A stretch of 36,670 nucleotides of DNA from Octopus bimaculoides (lineage: Eukaryota): NCBI RefSeq assembly GCF_001194135.2, contig NC_068995.1, positions 5,464,957 through 5,501,626 of the forward strand. The letters run 5' to 3'. The notes beneath the pieces were generated by a model. It was not told the DNA's origin and ran no database searches. It was given only the letters and a program-made list of their open reading frames with translations. This document shows positions 1,216 to 35,890 of this stretch, in pieces. A program made the position numbers and the translations under genes. Positions within the stretch are counted from its first letter, which is position 1; each line of letters opens with the position of its first letter.

Positions 1216-1940
1216 AAAAGAAATCTTTTTTCACTGGCAAATCTAATACATAGATGAAATATCGTTCAATTGGCCACCGGGGAGTGAAAATATAACAAAA
1301 TGGAAGAAGAAATATTAGAGACAAAAAGAAAACCAAAAAAAAAAAATAATTACAATAAAAAAATAAAACCAAAAAAATGACAATGAGGCAGGAATGAACT
1401 AAGTTTAAAAAATTCACCTTGCGGCATATAATGGTATTTTTTNNNNNNNNNNAGAAGAAATACATTTCAAGACTTATCCTCTGGCTTTATACTGAGTGTT
1501 CCAAAAATATAGCGTCACACCATCACCGTTAACACCAACCACTGACTACTAATGCTGCAACCATCAGAACCATCGCCTCCTTCGCAATATCACCCCCCCA
1601 CGCTCCCATTGTTACCAAAACCGCACCAGTACTATCATCAATACAATGATCTGTAGCTTCACCACGATCACCAACGCCGTCTTCACCACAACAACCAACG
1701 CACCCACAAATATAACTCGCCACCGTCAAGAGCAAAAAATAAAAAAAAATAAAAAATAAATTTCTTTAATACAACAACAAAAACGACAAAGTTCCAATTT
1801 TAGCAAGAAAAACAGTATTAAGACAAAATACACACACACATATATTTACATAAATATATGAATACATATATTTATGTAGATATGAATACCTATATATGTA
1901 TCCATACATACACATATGCATATATATATATATATATATA

Positions 1941-9287: not shown

Positions 9288-10750
9288 TGGATGCATGTAC
9301 ATATATCTTTTCCTTTATCGGTTACATTCTCTACCTTTCTCTTTGATCTTACCATTCATTTCTCTGTCTCCGGCTTTCCTTCTCTCTCTATTTACCTCTC
9401 CATCGATTCACTTCTATTTACCTCTGTATCAACTTACCTCTATCTATCTATCTATTTTCCTCTGACCTCTCCCATTGACTATCAGTTCCCGTCTCACATT
9501 TTTTATTCAATTTCCTCCCTNNNNNNNNNNNNNNNNNNNNNNNNNNNNNNNNNNNNNNNNNNNNNNNNNNNNNNNNNNNNNNNNNNNNNNNNNNNNNNNN
9601 NNNNNNNNNNNNNNNNNNNNNNNNNNNNNNNNNNNNNNNNNNNNNNNNNNNNNNNNNNNNNNNNNNNNNNNNNNNNNNNNNNNNNNNNNNNNNNNNNNNN
9701 NNNNNNNNNNNNNCCTTCCTTCCTTCCTTCCTTCCTTCCTTCCTTCCTTCCTTCCTCACCAATTCTGTTAATTTCCTTCCATTTTACAAACAAAATTTTC
9801 TCCAAATAACAGAGTACTTTTTCTGGTTCTAGATTTTATATATGTGTGTGTGTGCCTGTGTACGCTCATGCACACATACATTACATATCTACATACACAC
9901 AGTCACAGGATATAAGATTAATTACTAAAAGGAACTCTACTCGAAAAGTACTCAATATATGTCATAACCTAGAGTTTTTAATGAATATATTTTTATGTTT
10001 ATCTGAAAACTGCTCCCAAGTTAGTAATCAAATACATAAAACACACATAGATATGTGTGTGCATGTGAATGTATACGTGCTTGTGTATAATCTGTGTAGT
10101 GTGTTTGTCTGTGTATGTTTATATACATGTATATACATACACACATGCATATATATATATATATATATANNNNNNNNNNNNNNNNNNNNNNNNNNNNNNN
10201 NNNNNNNNNNNNNNNNNNNNNNNNNNNNNNNNNNNNNNNNNNNNNNNNNNNNNNNNNNNNNNNNNNNNNNNNNNNNNNNNNNNNNNNNNNNNNNNNNNNN
10301 NNNNNNNNNNNNNNNNNNNNNNNNNNNNNNNNNNNNNNNNNNNNNNNNNNNNNNNNNNNNNNNNNNNNNNNNNNNNNNNNNNNNNNNNNNNNNNNNNNNN
10401 NNNNNNNNNNNNNNNNNNNNNNNNNNNNNNNNNNNNNNNNNNNNNNNNNNNNNNNNNNNNNNNNNNNNNNNNNNNNNNNNNNNNNNNNNNNNNNNNNNNN
10501 NNNNNNNNNNNNNNNNNNNNNNNNNNNNNNNNNNNNNNNNNNNNNNNNNNNNNNNNNNNNNNNNNNNNNNNNNNNNNNNNNNNNNNNNNNNNNNNNNNNN
10601 NNNNNNNNNNNNNNNNNNNNNNNNNNNNNNNNNNNNNNNNNNNNNNNATATATATATTTCACAGTAGTTGTTTTTCAACTACTCCCTTCACTGTGTTTGT
10701 GTCTATGCATATAAGTGTCTGTGTGCATGTATATATATATGTATATATAA

Positions 10751-12819: not shown

Positions 12820-13547
12820 TAGGGTGTTTGGGCTAAACTTTATATATATGTATATATTACGCACAAGTACATATACAAGGATAGTTACATACATAAATAA
12901 ACATGAAGTCTTGTACCAAATGAATCTGGTTATAAGGTGAAATTGATTATCTTCGTATAGGGTGTTAGAAACTGATATTTGAACGAAGATTGTTAGTTCC
13001 TCACTATAAAAATAATGTTTATTAACTTTCATATGATAGATTAGTCGATAAATACTAAAATATTTCGAGGAAATGATATTATTTATNNNNNNNNNNNNNN
13101 NNNNNNNNNNNNNNNNNNNNNNNNNNNNNNNNNNNNNNNNNNNNNNNNNNNNNNNNNNNNNNNNNNNNNNNNNNNNNNNNNNNNNNNNNNNNNNNNNNNN
13201 NNNNNNNNNNNNNNNNNNNNNNNNNNNNNNNNNNNNNNNNNNNNNNNNNNNNNNNNNNNNNNNNNNNNNAAGAATGAGACAGAGATACATAAGTAGAATG
13301 CGAGTAGGAAAGACTAATTAATACAGAAAGTGGATTCACCTAAACCTCTGTCATTAATCTAGCACATTTACAGCTGTTTTCTGTTCTCAATTTCATGTAA
13401 TTATTATTCCTTCTATAATAAGCTCAACTCTATCTTCGACTTACACTTCAGCCAATATTCCCTCCTCTATTTTTCTCTTTCATACATACTACGTTTCCAT
13501 AATATGTTGCATATTCAGATTCCATAATTTTGACGGGTAATACGCTA

Positions 13548-17715: not shown

Positions 17716-17725
17716 NNNNNNNNNN

Positions 17726-17766
<41 letters not shown>

Positions 17767-19639
17767 TATGCTTCCCAATAGTGTTGACGGAGGGAACTGA
17801 CTGGAATTGTGTTACATAATAGGGTCTTTAGAATTCTGTAATTAACTGTACTTGATTTTGTGAAACACATGTGAATTATATTTATATAAAGCTGAAACAC
17901 CATTTTCGTTTTCTGTGTTCCTTTTCTGTATATGTCTTTATGTATAGATATATATAGCTGCAGTCAAACATTAGACTGATGGACCACTCAATATCTTTTG
18001 GTAGAATGAGACATATCAACTTTAAAAGAAAGTCGTTGACAGTGACATCGAAGCTTGGATTATGTAAATATCATACGCTACACAGCCTTCAGTCCAATGA
18101 AGGGATATATACCAAATTGCACTTGAGAAATATAAGTCAGTCCCCGTTTGAACTCCTTTGATTATTGATGTTTGGAATTATGGCTGACCAAAAGAGAAGA
18201 AGAGGAAAAAAATGCTCCGACAAAGATATTCCCCGCCACTAGTCCCACTGCCTCAGCTGCAGTTGTGACCAGTCAGGAAGCAGAACTCGAGCAAAATGTT
18301 AATTTTCAATTTTGATGAAATATGCATTATATTTGTACCCAGTCTTTTGTATATACAGTTCTGTTTCAGATGCTTGCACCCTGCATTTTAACATACACCA
18401 GAGTATGTTTTAACAATTCCTACATTGTTATATATATCACGTAAATAGAATTTATTATGTCTCTGGTACCCAACGTTTCTTGCTGACAAAGATCAACAAT
18501 TTATAAATGTAAAAATACGAATAATATACCACCATGAACAGATGGTATTGTAGAATGTTTTGGTCATGATATCATACATTATAGAGACTACTACCCGGAT
18601 GATATTTTTGGCCAAGTCCATATTACTAACTGATAGTATGGGAGACATTGTCAGTGCTAACTCAGTAGATTTTTGTTTTGTATGTTTGTATGTATGTGTG
18701 TGTATATAAGAATAGTTTAATTCTGCCTCATTGAATACGTGTACGAATACGTGCATTTGCGTAGCTAGAGTGAGAGTGGAATGTCTGTGGGTGGGTGTAG
18801 CTATGCGCATGTGCGGGAAATATTTTCACTTAATGTTATTAATTATTACATAGAAATCAAGTGCCTACAGGTTTCAGAAGCTTTTTTTTTATATATCGAG
18901 AAAGAGAGAGAACGAGAGGGATACAAAGTGAGACAGATGCATGGATGTAGAGATGTATAGGTGAAGAGGCGGCAAGGCAAGTGATGAGCAAGGTTGGAAA
19001 AGTTGAGGAGAAAGTGAGGGTTAAGTGTAAGTGCGAGTGTGCGCGCATGTGTGAGTGTGTGTGTGCACGTTGTGAGAGTTTGTGTGTGTGTTTCAGAATA
19101 ATACGTTAAAGCAAGCCCACACACACACACAAAAAAAAAAAAATAGAAATCAAAGAAACATCTACTGATGGGGTGGGGGGTTCAGTATGAAAGATAAAGT
19201 CACACCTCATGAAAATCCAATCCCGAGATTATTGGAGCCATCAGGCGAACAAAGTCATAACGAATATATATATATATATATATACATGCATATGCTCNNN
19301 NNNNNNNNNNNNNNNNNNNNNNNNNNNNNNNNNNNNNNNNNNNNNNNNNNNNNNNNNNNNNNNNNNNNNNNNNNNNNNATATATATATATATATATACAC
19401 ACACATACACACACACCTCTTTCTGCACTCACGTAGAATTTCCCTTAAAAATGTATACCTGAGGTATTTTGAGAAATGTGTGTGTGTGTGTACATACACA
19501 TATATGTGCGTGTGTGTTTGTGTATATTGGTTTCTGCATCTATATGTATATAAGTGAGAAGAGACAGAGTTGAAGACAGTGAGAGCGTGAGATAAAGATG
19601 GAGATAAAATATATGTAAGGGAAAAAAAACTTTGAGAAG

Positions 19640-29346: not shown

Positions 29347-30323
29347 CTAAAGAACAAGAAGAAAAATAATTCTCTACTGAAATCTGATAGTATCACGATA
29401 AAGGTATTAACTTAATCCGTATAATATCCTGGGTAATATTGTCCACAGGATTAAGGGAACAAGATAATCCTCCTTTTGTGTCGTGTGTGTCTGGAATTTT
29501 AATTTTCTACATTGTTTTAGATATGAAAAAAAAAAAAAATAAACGATATTCGTTCTTTTTTAATAACAGCAGCAACCTTGAACAGGATTGAATTATTTAA
29601 TACAGAAGAAGGGGTTATATGACTGTAAGGGTACTTCGTTGACTTAGTAGTTAAGAGAAGTATCAAATTACGGACCGGAGAAGACACCGTTTCGTGTCCA
29701 GTGGAGAACAAATAAATGAAGAGAAGAGTATTTATTCTGACTCAGCCTTGATATTTGAAAATAGCTAACACCAGGTTCACAACTATTTTAGTGTCAATAT
29801 ATTAATTACTGTTATAACAGATTGGACATAGGTCCACATTACATAANNNNNNNNNNNNNNNNNNNNNNNNNNNNNNNNNNNNNNNNNNNNNNNNNNNNNN
29901 NNNNNNNNNNNNNNNNNNNNNNNNNNNNNNNNNNNNNNNNNNNNNNNNNNNNNNNNNNNNNNNNNNNNNNNNNNNNNNNNNNNNNNNNNNNNNNNNNNNN
30001 NNNNNNNNNNNNNNNNNNNNNNNNNNNNNNNNNNNNNNNNNNNNNNNNNNNNNNNNNNNNNNNNNNNNNNNNNNNNNNNNNNNNNNNNNNNNNNNNNNNN
30101 NNNNNNNNNNNNNNNNNNNNNNNNNNNNNNNNNNNNNNNNNNNNNNNNNNNNNNNNNNNNNNNNNNNNNNNNNNNNNNNNNNNNNNNNNNNNNNNNNNNN
30201 NNNNNNNNNNNNNNNNNNNNNNNNNNNNNNNNNNNNNNNNNNNNNNNNNNNNNNNNNNNNNNNNNNNNNNNNNNNNNNNNNNNNNNNNNNNNNNNNNNNN
30301 NNNNNNNNNNNNNNNNNNNNNNN

Positions 30324-30370
<47 letters not shown>

Positions 30371-31113
30371 TATGCATATATACATATTTTTATATAACTG
30401 TATAAATGCAGCCTCCTCTCATCAGTCATCTGTTGCGTTCTTGTCCCATATTTGGGATTTATGTATACATACAGCGGCGTACGTGCACTTTTGCTCATGT
30501 ATATATATATATACACACATAATGTATGTACTTATATGTGTGTTAAGTTGATGTGAAAGCCGCAGCTACTACTTCTATTGCTTAGTTCACTTGTGACTGT
30601 ACACACGGTTAAAGCAACATGTGTTCAAGTGGTTAGTAATATTTCCCTGTGATCTTGTCGCGTATTTCTTGTACGCATGCGAACTGTTATACATTCCTAC
30701 ATTATACACCTGTTTAAATATAAATATATTATGTAAATCTGCCTATTTATGGGAATGGCTTCTCTCCCTCACAACGTATTACCTTACTTTTGTTTATTTG
30801 ATCGTTTCAAAGGTAACCTTTTCTATGCATTTAAATGGTTTCTGAAATAAACACACACGGCACTTTATAGCCTCCGAGGATGCTATAAGATGATGTATAA
30901 GCACTCGGCTCTGAAGACAGTAAGAGCTGTACACCAACGAAGCTGATTATATAATTCTCTTGTCATTCTATCAATCCAGATTACGCTCTTGACTCGTCCA
31001 ACATTTTATTCTGAAGCATATGTATTTCGAGTTTAACAACTGGTTATTAGAATCGCACTGTGTATATGAGTATATATACATACAATATGTATACATATAT
31101 GTACGTACATAAA

Positions 31114-31337
31114 TATTCCTTTATTCCTTTGTTTCAGTCATTTGACTGCAGCCATGCTGGAGCACCGCCTTTAGTCGAGCAAATCGACCCCCAGGACTAT
31201 TCTTTGTAAGCCTAGTACTTATCCAATCGTTTAGTTTTGGTGAATCCACTAAGTTACGGAAGCATAAACACACCAACAACGGTTGTCAAGCGACGGTGCG
31301 GGGACGAATACAGACACACAAACATACACACACACAC

Positions 31338-32133: not shown

Positions 32134-32280
32134 GGCGAGCGAGCCGTGGGGAATGCTTAGCGGTATTTCGTCTGTCTTTATGTTCTGAGTTGAAATTCCG
32201 GCGAGGTCGACTTTGCCTTTCATCCTTTCGGGGTCGATAAATTAAGTACCAGTTGCATACTGGGATCAATTCAATCGACT
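32134..32280 (+). mobile_element. SINE family A
   Basis: aatgcttagcggtatttcgtctgtc...gaggtcgactttgcctttcatcctttcggggtcgataaattaagtaccag. Confidence 0.9.
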
Positions 32281-32329
32281 ATTTATATATAGAAATGTAT
32301 AATAAATATAGATTTCTATATATAATACA

Positions 32330-32365
32330 TACATATAGATATATATTCACATATATGTACATACG

Positions 32366-32455
<90 letters not shown>

Positions 32456-32510
32456 CATATACAAACATACATATATACATATATATAGATGCATATATAC
32501 ATATATATAC
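32330..32510. repeat. (CA)n(TA)n and degenerate flanks
   Basis: Direct reading. Confidence 0.95.
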
Positions 32511-32558
32511 AAATAAATAAATTGTAAATCCAAAAAATAACAACAAAACTACAAAGGA

Positions 32559-32645
32559 TTCCGCGGTACACGTGTTTCAAGCTTTACATGTGTATAATAT
32601 AATATGTGTATAATTTACAATGTAAAGCTATCCTCAGCCGCAAAA
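32559..32645 (-). ncRNA. Type I hammerhead ribozyme, minimal helix III form
   Basis: Minus strand reads UUUUGCGG-CUGAGGA-U-AGCUUUACAU-(30 nt)-AUGUAAAGCU-U-GAAA-CACGU-GUA/CCGCGGAA. Helix I is 8 bp (6 Watson-Crick, 2 G-U). CUGANGA and GAAA cores are intact. Helix II is 10 perfect bp behind a U-U pair. Helix III is the palindrome ACACGUGU. The GUA triplet predicts cleavage between 32567 and 32566. Confidence 0.85.
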
Positions 32646-32889
32646 TTATTTCTCTCCCAGGAAATTATACCACCTCGGCGTTGAAGTAGGAAGAAAGGTG
32701 TGATGTAAGAGGTGAAGATCCTTTCGGTATTCTGTATAGTACTATACCTCGTATAATTCTCCACCCACACATAATCTCTCCGGTCCTCCGAAAACCTTCC
32801 ATACCTTGCCACGATTCAGTGTGTAGTGTTAAGTTGGTGGTTAAGAACAATACAATACAATAAAAAGACATACACAGATATTCATGTAA

Positions 32890-33873
32890 NNNNNNNNNNN
32901 NNNNNNNNNNNNNNNNNNNNNNNNNNNNNNNNNNNNNNNNNNNNNNNNNNNNNNNNNNNNNNNNNNNNNNNNNNNNNNNNNNNNNNNNNNNNNNNNNNNN
33001 NNNNNNNNNNNNNNNNNNNNNNNNNNNNNNNNNNNNNNNNNNNNNNNNNNNNNNNNNNNNNNNNNNNNNNNNNNNNNNNNNNNNNNNNNNNNNNNNNNNN
33101 NNNNNNNNNNNNNNNNNNNNNNNNNNNNNNNNNNNNNNNNNNNNNNNNNNNNNNNNNNNNNNNNNNNNNNNNNNNNNNNNNNNNNNNNNNNNNNNNNNNN
33201 NNNNNNNNNNNNNNNNNNNNNNNNNNNNNNNNNNNNNNNNNNNNNNNNNNNNNNNNNNNNNNNNNNNNNNNNNNNNNNNNNNNNNNNNNNNNNNNNNNNN
33301 NNNNNNNNNNNNNNNNNNNNNNNNNNNNNNNNNNNNNNNNNNNNNNNNNNNNNNNNNNNNNNNNNNNNNNNNNNNNNNNNNNNNNNNNNNNNNNNNNNNN
33401 NNNNNNNNNNNNNNNNNNNNNNNNNNNNNNNNNNNNNNNNNNNNNNNNNNNNNNNNNNNNNNNNNNNNNNNNNNNNNNNNNNNNNNNNNNNNNNNNNNNN
33501 NNNNNNNNNNNNNNNNNNNNNNNNNNNNNNNNNNNNNNNNNNNNNNNNNNNNNNNNNNNNNNNNNNNNNNNNNNNNNNNNNNNNNNNNNNNNNNNNNNNN
33601 NNNNNNNNNNNNNNNNNNNNNNNNNNNNNNNNNNNNNNNNNNNNNNNNNNNNNNNNNNNNNNNNNNNNNNNNNNNNNNNNNNNNNNNNNNNNNNNNNNNN
33701 NNNNNNNNNNNNNNNNNNNNNNNNNNNNNNNNNNNNNNNNNNNNNNNNNNNNNNNNNNNNNNNNNNNNNNNNNNNNNNNNNNNNNNNNNNNNNNNNNNNN
33801 NNNNNNNNNNNNNNNNNNNNNNNNNNNNNNNNNNNNNNNNNNNNNNNNNNNNNNNNNNNNNNNNNNNNNNNNN
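32890..33873. other. Largest assembly gap. Others: 1443-1452, 9521-9713, 10170-10647, 13087-13269, 17716-17725, 19298-19378, 29847-30323
   Basis: Runs of N, most abutting microsatellites. Confidence 1.
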
Positions 33874-33879
33874 TATACA

Positions 33880-34085
33880 TAAAATATGTGTTTATGTGTG
33901 TCTGTGTTTGTCCCCCCCCACCATCGATTGACAACTGATGCTAGTTTGTTTACGTCCTCGTAAAAGAGACCGATAAAATAAGTGCTAGGCTTACAAAGAA
34001 TAAGTCCTGGGGTCGATTTATTCGACTAAAGGCGGTGCTCCAGCATGGCCGCAGTCTAACGACTGAAACAAGTAAAGGAATAAAA

Positions 34086-34090
<5 letters not shown>
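33880..34090 (+). mobile_element. SINE family B, 3' half (head probably inside the preceding gap)
   Basis: Emerges from the N gap in the microsatellite spacer and continues to aaggcggtgctccagcatggccgcag...gactgaaacaagtaaa. Confidence 0.9.
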
Positions 34091-34119
<29 letters not shown>

Positions 34120-35731: not shown

Positions 35732-35890
35732 GCGGTGAACTGGCTAAATTCGTAAGTCTTTATGTTGTGGGTTCAAATTCCGCTGAGGTCGACTTTGCCT
35801 TTTACCCTTTCGGGATCAATGAAATAAATACCAGTTGAGCACAGGGGGCAATGTGAGTGACTAGCTCCCTCCCCACAAAGGATTATTAAT
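35732..35890 (+). mobile_element. SINE family A with internal deletions
   Basis: gcggtgaactggc...ggttcaaattccgctgaggtcgactttgcc...aaaggattatt. Confidence 0.85.

What the first reader, a model, noticed from the sequence alone, without database searches (positions are those of the whole stretch)
32559..32645. Near-canonical type I hammerhead ribozyme with palindromic, dimer-type helix III
Seen: every hammerhead element is present in order on the minus strand. Helix I is UUUUGCGG/CCGCGGAA, the cores are CUGAGGA and GAAA, helix II is AGCUUUACAU/AUGUAAAGCU (10 bp), and the triplet is GUA. Helix III is the self-complementary ACACGUGU, which as a monomer gives only about 2 bp plus a tetraloop. Known: minimal type I hammerheads with palindromic helix III typify Penelope-like elements and retrozyme-type non-autonomous retroelements, and they cleave best as dimers. 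Atypical here are the U-U pair at 10.1/11.1 and a long AU-rich loop II with a duplicated 11-mer (atgtgtataat twice on plus). No reverse transcriptase ORF is visible nearby. Inference: this is the mark of a ribozyme-bearing mobile RNA family, or a retained intronic ribozyme, in a cephalopod-like genome.
Basis: partly seen in the sequence, partly recalled or inferred. Interest (0 to 1): 0.88.

Follow-up and report, generated by a model that had tools for sequence, protein, structure and literature searches.

The report
Hammerhead ribozyme motif in repeat family
The motif is real: a minimal self-cleaving "hammerhead" RNA motif carried by a short repeat present about a thousand times in this genome, of a kind already known from Penelope-like retroelements and retrozymes in many animals, with no sign yet that this copy cuts itself.

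Summary
These are helix I (8 bp), CUGAGGA, a U.U mismatch, a 10-bp helix II with a 30-nt loop, GAAA, the palindromic helix III ACACGUGU, and the GUA triplet. A descriptor scan finds only this site in the window. Extrapolated from random sequence, about 0.07 motifs of this quality are expected per 2.7-Gb genome.

It is not a single-copy or intronic ribozyme. The stretch 32516-~32860 belongs to a repeat family of roughly 10^3 copies in organism A. Across the family, no variant reaches 3% at any catalytic-core position. N7 varies in 20-45% of copies. Stem changes are pair-preserving or compensated. One subfamily carries a C-G to U-A double change, a shorter loop II and a 3-bp helix III.

Against activity: Rfam gives no hammerhead hit even at E<=10. 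The G10.1-C11.1 pair is replaced by U.U. RNA-seq coverage is low and equal in both read orientations, with no read-end pile-up at the predicted cut. No tandem array or RT ORF is visible, though a 984-N gap abuts the element. A 36-nt 3' half is 2-7 times more abundant than the full motif.

Verdict: a new member of a known kind. Activity is untested.

The parts
32516..32889 (-). Copy (fragment) of the repeat family that carries the motif. Family-level similarity runs from about 32516 to about 32860. The copy is cut off at its 5' side by an assembly gap and abuts a microsatellite at its 3' side.
   Evidence: Hundreds of contigs and reads at 80-99% identity were laid on it from DNA and RNA runs. 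Depth falls off beyond about 32850. Other copies continue past 32516 with a consistent sequence. GC is 36%.
32638..32645 (-). Helix I, 5' strand: UUUUGCGG
   Evidence: Sequence and descriptor. No substitution >=3% at 32638-32644; U32645>C is rare. A 1-nt U insertion occurs in about 5% of copies.
32631..32637 (-). Catalytic core C3-A9: CUGAGGA
   Evidence: Only N7 (32633, G>A) varies, at 20-45% of copies. The other six positions show no variant >=3%.
32630..32630 (-). U at position 10.1. It lies opposite U11.1 (32579), giving a U.U mismatch where G10.1-C11.1 is expected.
   Evidence: It is kept in the family (U>C in about 3% of RNA reads only; 32579 is invariant). Precedent in HHR_Amex2 (PMC7229834).
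32620..32629 (-). Helix II, 5' strand: AGCUUUACAU
   Evidence: Variable only at 32623 (A>G) and 32622 (C>U).
32590..32619 (-). Loop II, 30 nt and AU-rich. It contains the 11-mer duplication (plus strand 32588-32598 and 32604-32614).
   Evidence: Other subfamilies have loops of 12-16 nt without the duplication. Depth drops here because of indel heterogeneity.
32580..32589 (-). Helix II, 3' strand: AUGUAAAGCU
   Evidence: Variants are 32584 A>G (U-A to U.G) and 32587 G>A (the partner of 32622 C>U).
32575..32578 (-). G12 A13 A14 A15.1 (GAAA)
   Evidence: No variant >=3% in four runs.
32568..32575 (-). Helix III, the palindrome ACACGUGU. As a monomer it gives 2 bp plus the tetraloop ACGU. As a dimer it gives an 8-bp intermolecular duplex.
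   Evidence: Cofold of two copies gives -58.1 kcal/mol against 2 x -22.6, with an intermolecular helix III. Subfamily B has ACACACGUGU, which is 3 bp plus CACG.
32566..32567 (-). Predicted cleavage site, 3' of A17 (32567) and 5' of C1.1 (32566). The triplet is GUA.
   Evidence: The position follows from the hammerhead numbering. There is no excess of read ends here in raw RNA reads.
32559..32566 (-). Helix I, 3' strand: CCGCGGAA
   Evidence: At 32562, G>A (35-55%) turns U.G into U-A, and 32561 G>A does the same. 32560 A>U (about 3%) breaks a distal pair.
32551..32586 (-). 36-nt module UAAAGCUUGAAACACGUGUACCGCGGAAUCCUUUGU, the 3' half of the motif. It is 2-7 times more abundant than the rest and is shared with a second, more diverged repeat group.
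   Evidence: Depth peaks at this stretch, and loose ends sit at 32551 and 32586.
32890..33873 (.). Assembly gap of 984 N directly 5' of the element. It hides the upstream continuation.
32315..32515 (.). (TA)n/(TG)n microsatellite abutting the 3' side of the copy
   Evidence: The sub-threshold Rfam mir-297 and mir-3149 matches here are low-complexity artefacts.

Best explanation
The site is one inserted copy, probably a fragment, of a lineage-specific interspersed repeat of roughly 10^3 copies. The repeat carries a minimal type I hammerhead ribozyme of the kind found in Penelope-like-element pLTRs and in non-LTR retrozymes.

Inferred mechanism. On the element's sense (minus-strand) transcript, helices I and II form within one motif. 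The weak palindromic helix III pairs with that of a second motif, either in a multimeric transcript or between two RNAs. The resulting double hammerhead would cut 3' of A17 (32567/32566) and trim the retroelement RNA to unit length.

Shown here: the motif, its statistical unlikelihood, the multi-copy family, and conservation of core and pairing among subfamilies.

Inferred only: catalysis, dimer use, and mobilisation by a Penelope-like reverse transcriptase.

This particular copy is most likely a passive insertion that is transcribed only as part of longer host transcripts.
For: - All parts of the motif are present in order. It is the only descriptor hit in the window.
- About 0.07 such motifs are expected by chance per 2.7-Gb genome.
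- The family is multi-copy. 584-747 DNA contigs per run were laid, with summed word depth of about 1e5 against about 55 for apparently single-copy variants. Raw DNA read depth was about 400-530 from about 1.9 Gb read.
- At a >=3% share in four runs, the 13 conserved core positions (C3-A6, G8, A9, G12-A14, A15.1, U16.1) plus the 15.2-16.2 pair, A17 and C1.1-C1.4 show no variant.
- The free position N7 varies at 20-45%.
- The frequent stem variants are G.U to A-U, U-A to U.G, A-U to G.U, or the paired change C32622U with G32587A.
- Subfamily B was reconstructed identically from contigs of two independent studies. It keeps the whole motif with bp8 C-G changed to U-A, loop II of 12-16 nt and a 3-bp helix III.
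- The dimer is favoured by about 13 kcal/mol through an 8-bp helix III.
- The architecture matches published classes. Long helix II and palindromic helix III occur in PLE min-HHRs (PMC4209133). U.U at the base of helix II with a 2-bp helix III plus tetraloop occurs in axolotl HHR_Amex2, which is active mainly as a dimer (PMC7229834).
- GC is low at 36%, and the copy abuts a microsatellite, a preferred target of Penelope-like elements (PMC8557442).
Against: - No Rfam hammerhead match, even at E<=10 on 116 nt.
- G10.1-C11.1, highly conserved in canonical and PLE hammerheads, is replaced by U.U.
- No loop-loop tertiary contacts are evident.
- Raw RNA-seq (X38) covers the family at only about 100-240x summed over all copies. 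Coverage is equal in both read orientations. Reads span the site, and there is no pile-up of ends at 32567/32566.
- No tandem copy, no second motif and no RT or GIY-YIG ORF is present in the window. No head-to-tail joint was seen.
- About half (raw reads) to six sevenths (contig depth) of the copies of the 36-nt 3' half lack a recognisable 5' half within about 80 nt.
- Conservation among copies of a fairly young family (mostly 90-99% alike) is weak evidence of selection. The stem-change pattern alone has p of about 0.1.
Confidence: 0.7

Rival explanations
1. The 36-nt module 32551-32586 is the selected unit. It holds three palindromes (AAGCUU, ACACGUGU, CCGCGG). It could be, for example, a 3' recognition or priming module for the mobilising reverse transcriptase, or a protein-binding or dimerisation site shared by several non-autonomous families. 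On this reading the complete hammerhead in this family is a secondary or vestigial by-product, with no cleavage role today.
For: The module is 2-7 times more abundant than the 5' half and the body. A second repeat group shares only this module and diverges on both sides, and the 30 nt upstream of the module in that group show no CUGANGA. There is no RNA evidence of cleavage.
Against: It does not explain why the 5' half (core CUGANGA plus both complementary strands) is kept invariant in this family apart from N7. It also does not explain why helix II shows a compensated C-G to U-A change. Only 30 nt of the other group's upstream sequence could be seen, so a more distant 5' half is not excluded.
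Confidence: 0.13
2. The match is a chance resemblance. A hairpin-containing repeat happens to match the hammerhead consensus, and the apparent conservation simply reflects recent amplification from one master copy.
For: Real genomes contain more hairpins than random models. The first stage scanned many windows. Copies are mostly 90-99% alike, so little time has passed for decay. There is no Rfam hit and no G10.1-C11.1 pair.
Against: Expectation is about 0.07 per genome for this quality. The match extends to features not needed for a chance hit but typical of retroelement hammerheads, namely the palindromic helix III, the long helix II and residence in a retroelement-like repeat. Diverged subfamilies keep the motif through an indel-rich loop and a double-sided stem change.
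Confidence: 0.13
3. It is a single-copy, host-retained intronic or regulatory hammerhead.
For: None beyond the presence of the motif.
Against: The sequence is present in hundreds to thousands of copies with subfamilies. No copy at >=80% identity was found in RNA contigs of organisms B, C and D.
Confidence: 0.02

Closest known systems
Non-LTR retrozymes of animals, especially axolotl HHR_Amex2 (Cervera and de la Pena 2020, PMC7229834)
   Same: Type I topology. Helix III of 2 bp capped by a palindromic tetraloop. U.U mismatch at the base of helix II. Predicted dependence on a dimer. Carrier repeat a few hundred bp long, of low GC, multi-copy and transcribed.
   Different: No tandem array was seen here. 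Helix II is much longer (10 bp, with a 12-30-nt loop). No loop 1/loop 2 contacts are evident. RNA level is low and equal in both read orientations rather than abundant. The sequence is unrelated. The host is a different phylum.
[quoted passage not shown]
   Same: Long helix II. Palindromic 15.2-16.2 and loop 3. An extra U after A9. High copy number, with most motifs as solitary copies away from full elements. The copy is adjacent to a microsatellite.
   Different: The conserved G10.1-C11.1 pair is absent. Helix I is longer (8-9 bp against 4-5). No RT-EN ORF or second pLTR could be found, because a gap lies next to the element.
Rfam Hammerhead_1 (RF00163): satellite and SINE hammerheads of newts, Schistosoma and cave crickets. 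235 such loci are annotated in the giant squid genome (PMC6962438).
   Same: Same catalytic core, type I topology and residence in repeats. Cephalopod genomes are already known to hold type I hammerheads.
   Different: This motif does not reach even E<=10 against any Rfam hammerhead model. I infer, without a test, that the 50-nt helix II/loop II insertion, the U.U mismatch and the minimal helix III are the cause.

Membership tests
Hammerhead ribozyme, type I | Conserved core C3 U4 G5 A6 N7 G8 A9 ... G12 A13 A14, with A15.1-U16.1 and H17 | tested here: met
   CUGAGGA at 32637-31, GAAA at 32578-75, U16.1 at 32568 and A17 at 32567. These positions are invariant in the family at >=3%.
Hammerhead ribozyme, type I | Three helices around the core, with helix I open-ended | tested here: met
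   Helix I is 8-9 bp, helix II 10 bp, and helix III 2 bp as a monomer or 8 bp as a dimer.
Hammerhead ribozyme, type I | G10.1-C11.1 closing pair of helix II | tested here: not met
   U32630 lies opposite U32579, and this is kept across the family. A U.U mismatch is documented in the weakly active HHR_Amex2 (PMC7229834).
Hammerhead ribozyme, type I | Match to a curated covariance model (Rfam RF00163, RF00008, RF02275-7) | tested here: not met
   No hit at gathering threshold or at E<=10 on 601 nt and 116 nt.
Hammerhead ribozyme, type I | Site-specific self-cleavage 3' of H17 | tested here: inconclusive
   There is no pile-up of read ends at 32567/32566 in raw RNA reads, and reads span the site. 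The library type is unknown and the reads pool about 10^3 loci. Biochemistry is not possible with these tools.
Hammerhead ribozyme, type I | Covariation supporting the helices among homologues | tested here: inconclusive
   There is one double-sided change (bp8 of helix II, C-G to U-A) and several wobble-preserving changes. Individual copies could not be retrieved, so no formal test was possible.
Penelope-like element pLTR min-HHR | Located in direct repeats that flank an RT plus GIY-YIG ORF | tested here: inconclusive
   No RT or EN domain was found in any window ORF. A 984-N gap lies directly upstream. The 74-codon open frame upstream has no homologue.
Penelope-like element pLTR min-HHR | Long helix II, an extra nucleotide after A9, and palindromic 15.2-16.2 / loop 3 | tested here: met
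   Helix II is 10 bp. U follows A9, though opposite another U. Helix III is the palindrome ACACGUGU (criteria from PMC4209133).
Non-LTR retrozyme | Head-to-tail tandem repeats (about 50-970 bp units), each with a type I hammerhead | tested here: inconclusive
   The window holds a single copy. No head-to-tail joint appears in contigs or 150-nt reads. The unit ends lie outside the readable stretch. Solitary monomers are common in known families (bioRxiv 10.64898/2026.07.22.740005).
Non-LTR retrozyme | Abundant unit-length linear and circular RNA | tested here: not met
   527 of 12.9 million RNA reads were laid on the 375-nt stretch, in both orientations equally, with no unit-length ends. Circular RNA would be lost from a poly(A)-selected library, and the library type is unknown.
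Non-LTR retrozyme | Multi-copy, low GC (<45-50%), a few hundred bp | tested here: met
   About 10^3 copies, GC 36%, and a shared stretch of about 335-375 bp.

The most novel reading that the evidence does not exclude
The family could be a currently active, lineage-specific retrozyme-like element whose hammerhead works only in trans or as a dimer. On this reading the abundant 36-nt 'half-hammerhead' modules in a second repeat group act as substrate strands, cut by the enzyme halves of full copies. Ribozyme-bearing repeats would then process transcripts of another repeat family, or host transcripts that contain it.
Probability: 0.07. Interest if true: 0.6.

Novelty: new member of a known kind. 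Interest (0 to 1): 0.3.

Why it matters
If active, the motif would add a cephalopod lineage to the animals whose genomes carry hammerhead-processed retroelements. It would also provide a natural variant with U.U at 10.1/11.1, a 10-12-bp helix II and a palindromic helix III that curated covariance models miss. That would mean Rfam-based counts undercount such ribozymes; the giant squid genome paper, for example, reports 235 Hammerhead_1 loci. The surplus of 3' half-motifs is a small puzzle about how these elements recombine or decay. None of this changes the general picture set out for Penelope-like elements and retrozymes since 2014-2020.

Tried and rejected
- Rfam at three search sizes gave no hammerhead hit. 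The only matches were low-complexity miRNA-like hits in the adjacent microsatellite, which I dismissed.
- I searched for further copies in the window and found none.
- I scanned the metagenome and viral collections for the 22-mer core and found none.
- I tried to reach family copies through ORF products. The 74-aa open frame has no Pfam match and no homologue. The 65-aa ORF through the 5' half is not on record. Individual genomic copies therefore could not be fetched, and no alignment-based covariation test or custom covariance model was worthwhile.
- RNA contigs of organisms B, C and D hold no copy at >=80% identity. Their relatedness to organism A is unknown.
- A literature search for the core sequence string found nothing. 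No paper describes an octopus hammerhead family, and the supplement of PMC7229834 does not mention cephalopods.
- I tested whether the sequence that follows the element's 3' end in other copies is a diverged repeat of 32693-32665, which would hint at a tandem unit of about 178 nt. The score only just exceeded the 95th percentile of the shuffles (22 against 21; the best shuffle scored 28), so I did not rely on it.
- A type II permutation for the 'core-only' group is unlikely, because the 30 nt downstream of the module hold no CUGANGA.
- One read-laying run failed on the microsatellite filter.
- Copy-number estimates disagree. Contig depth gives about 1,800 copies of the body and about 13,000 of the core. 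Raw reads give about 600 and about 1,400. The raw DNA runs are linker and HindIII libraries, and the core contains an AAGCTT site, so they are biased.

Full report
**1. Observation**

On the minus strand the stretch reads 5'-UUUUGCGG CUGAGGA U AGCUUUACAU [30-nt loop] AUGUAAAGCU U GAAA CACGUG UA CCGCGGAA-3'. In hammerhead numbering the parts are:
- helix I 5' strand, 32645-32638;
- C3-A9, 32637-32631;
- U10.1, 32630;
- helix II, 32629-32620 paired with 32589-32580;
- U11.1, 32579;
- G12-A15.1, 32578-32575;
- helix III palindrome ACACGUGU, 32575-32568;
- A17, 32567, with the predicted cut between 32567 and 32566;
- helix I 3' strand, 32566-32559.

The 11-mer duplication in loop II is real.

**2. 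More than chance?**

I wrote a descriptor requiring exact CUGANGA and GAAA, helix I >=4 bp, helix II >=4 bp with one optional 1x1 mismatch at its base, an A15.1-U16.1 pair, a 15.2-16.2 pair and H17. It finds only this site on either strand of the window.

Forty megabases of Markov-1 sequence with the window's composition gave 6 hits at >=4/4 bp, 2 at >=5/5 and none at >=6/6. Extrapolated to the observed 8 and 10 bp, that is about 1e-6 per window and about 0.07 per 2.7-Gb genome.

The RNA folds with z = -3.45, and the minimum-free-energy structure holds helices I and II. Two copies cofold at -58.1 kcal/mol against 2 x -22.6, through an 8-bp intermolecular helix III.

**3. Curated models**

Rfam 15 gives no hammerhead match at gathering threshold. 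It also gives none at E<=10 on 601 nt or 116 nt. I attribute the miss to the roughly 50-nt helix II/loop II, the U.U mismatch and the minimal helix III. That attribution is inference, because edited sequences cannot be submitted to the Rfam tool.

**4. What the locus is**

The window holds no second copy, no tRNA, and no ORF with a Pfam domain.

Public runs of one organism ('organism A') hold the sequence many times over.
- 584-747 DNA contigs per run at 80-100% identity. Summed word depth is about 1e5 over the body, against about 55 for what look like single-copy variants.
- About 2,000 raw 150-nt DNA reads out of 1.9 Gb sampled. Depth is about 400-530 over the body and the 5' half of the motif.
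- Depending on the method, this means about 600 to 1,800 copies.
- 14% of reads are >=99% alike, about 35% are 95-99%, about 37% are 90-95% and 14% are lower.
- Similarity between copies runs from about 32516 to about 32860. Some copies continue past 32516 with a consistent sequence.
- The window copy is therefore a fragment. A (TA)n/(TG)n microsatellite bounds one side and a 984-N assembly gap bounds the other.
- RNA contigs of three other organisms from the same studies hold nothing at >=80%.

The 'retained intronic ribozyme' reading is thus excluded. The 'mobile family' reading stands.

**5. Is the motif kept in the family?**

Variant tables at a >=3% share were taken for two DNA-contig runs, one raw RNA run and one RNA-contig run. 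Tables at >=5% were taken for two raw DNA runs (22 rows of that table were not shown).

No variant was seen at C3, U4, G5, A6, G8, A9, G12, A13, A14, A15.1, C15.2, G16.2, U16.1, A17 or C1.1-C1.4.

N7 (32633, G>A) varies in 20-45% of copies.

The frequent stem variants are:
- 32562 and 32561 G>A (U.G to U-A in helix I);
- 32584 A>G (U-A to U.G);
- 32623 A>G (A-U to G.U);
- 32622 C>U together with 32587 G>A (C-G to U-A).

Only rare variants break distal pairs (32560 and 32645, about 3%). U10.1 and U11.1 are themselves conserved.

A diverged subfamily B was reconstructed from the listed differences of a 269-nt contig (2020 study) and a 339-nt contig (2015 study). The two reconstructions are identical. 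B reads UUUUGCGG CUGAAGA U AGCUUUGUAUUG...UGAUAUAAAGCU U GAAA CACACGUG UA CCGCAGAA. It passes the descriptor with helix I of 8 bp, helix II of 12 bp, loop II of 12 nt and a 3-bp helix III. A third variant with a 14-nt loop and C32622U also appears in RNA reads.

This is the pattern expected if source copies were selected for a hammerhead fold. The family is young, however, and haplotypes could not be retrieved. The evidence is therefore supportive, not decisive: the stem pattern alone has p of about 0.1.

**6. Evidence on activity**

In raw paired RNA reads (X38) the family is covered at about 100-240x summed over all copies, equally in both read orientations. Reads cross the predicted cut, and no position shows an excess of molecule ends.

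This looks like passive transcription of dispersed copies within longer RNAs. It does not look like the abundant unit-length linear or circular RNA of mussel or coral retrozymes (PMC7229834). The library type is unknown, so circular or non-polyadenylated RNA could have been lost.

No head-to-tail joints were seen. A few opposite-strand joints may be ligation artefacts of the linker library.

**7. An unexplained feature**

The 36-nt stretch 32551-32586 is the 3' half of the motif. It contains the palindromes AAGCUU, ACACGUGU and CCGCGG. It is 2-2.5 times (raw reads) to about 7 times (contig depth) more abundant than the 5' half.

The surplus copies diverge on both sides into their own loosely conserved consensus. 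Upstream this is ...AUAAUGAUGYAAYGAC...UUGUGUA. Downstream it is GUUCUGUUUU.... No CUGANGA appears in the 30 nt visible on either side.

In the RNA-abundant variant the upstream sequence is homologous to subfamily B's loop II with a 9-nt insertion. At least some of these copies may therefore be full motifs that the aligner could not bridge.

The raw DNA libraries are HindIII/linker libraries, and the core carries an AAGCTT site, so depth there is biased.

**8. Comparison with known systems**

- Long helix II, an extra nucleotide after A9, palindromic helix III, thousands of mostly solitary copies and low in vitro activity as monomers describe the min-HHRs of Penelope-like elements. Those elements, however, keep G10.1-C11.1 (PMC4209133).
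- A 2-bp helix III with a tetraloop plus a U.U mismatch at the base of helix II describes axolotl retrozyme HHR_Amex2. It cleaved 22% in one hour as a monomer and much better as a dimer (PMC7229834).
- Retrozymes are now argued to derive from PLE pLTRs, and solitary monomers are common (bioRxiv 10.64898/2026.07.22.740005).
- Penelope-like elements prefer microsatellite targets and cause assembly problems (PMC8557442). Both are consistent with this locus.
- Penelope-like elements are abundant in octopus genomes (PMC13282606). The giant squid genome paper lists 235 Rfam Hammerhead_1 loci (PMC6962438).
- No paper describes this family or its sequence.

**9. Verdict**

This is a genuine hammerhead-type motif embedded in a mobile repeat family, and a new member of a known kind. 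Its atypical features have precedent.

Catalysis, dimer use, tandem or pLTR organisation and the mobilising element remain inferred. The one RNA data set examined gives no sign of cleavage.

- Confidence that the motif is a true, evolutionarily derived retroelement hammerhead: about 0.7.
- Confidence that this copy cleaves appreciably in vivo: lower, about 0.3-0.4 (my judgement).
- Interest: 0.3.

Noticed in passing
window 32551-32586 (minus strand): A 36-nt module, the 3' half of the motif, has three palindromes (AAGCUU, ACACGUGU, CCGCGG). It is 2-7 times more abundant than the rest of the element. A second, more diverged repeat group shares it, and its visible flanks lack a CUGANGA half.
   Followed up: partly
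window 32665-32889 (minus strand): A stop-free frame of 74 codons runs from the gap edge to just upstream of the motif. It has no Pfam match and no homologue in the protein collection. It is probably non-coding.
   Followed up: yes
window 31085-31238 and 33962-34115; 32167-32281 and 35749-35863: Two pairs of SINE-like repeats bracket the locus. One pair is inverted (154 nt, 77% complementary). The other is direct (115 nt, 78% identical). From memory they resemble abundant octopus SINEs, which I did not verify.
   Followed up: no
window 1443-1452, 9521-9713, 10170-10647, 13087-13269, 17716-17725, 19298-19378, 29847-30323, 32890-33873: The window has eight runs of N (assembly gaps). Long 'ORFs' that span them are artefacts. 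The 984-N gap abuts the hammerhead element.
   Followed up: yes
window 32315-32515: The (TG)n/(TA)n microsatellite gives sub-threshold Rfam matches to mir-297, mir-3149 and RUF21. These are low-complexity artefacts.
   Followed up: yes
window 32583-32584, 32729, 32841 (runs X42, X43): Raw 'GENOMIC OTHER' reads break at these places and continue into the palindromic linker AGGTTCGTCCATCGATCGATGGACGAACCT. At 32583/32584 the break falls in the AAGCTT site. This points to a proximity-ligation-type library, so depth near such sites is not a clean copy-number measure.
   Followed up: partly
window 32638-32821, 32639-32815, 32682-32818, 32683-32785, 32741-32763: A few DNA reads and RNA contigs join opposite strands of the element, giving inverted junctions. 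These could be inverted partial copies, as described for Penelope-like insertions, or ligation or assembly artefacts.
   Followed up: no
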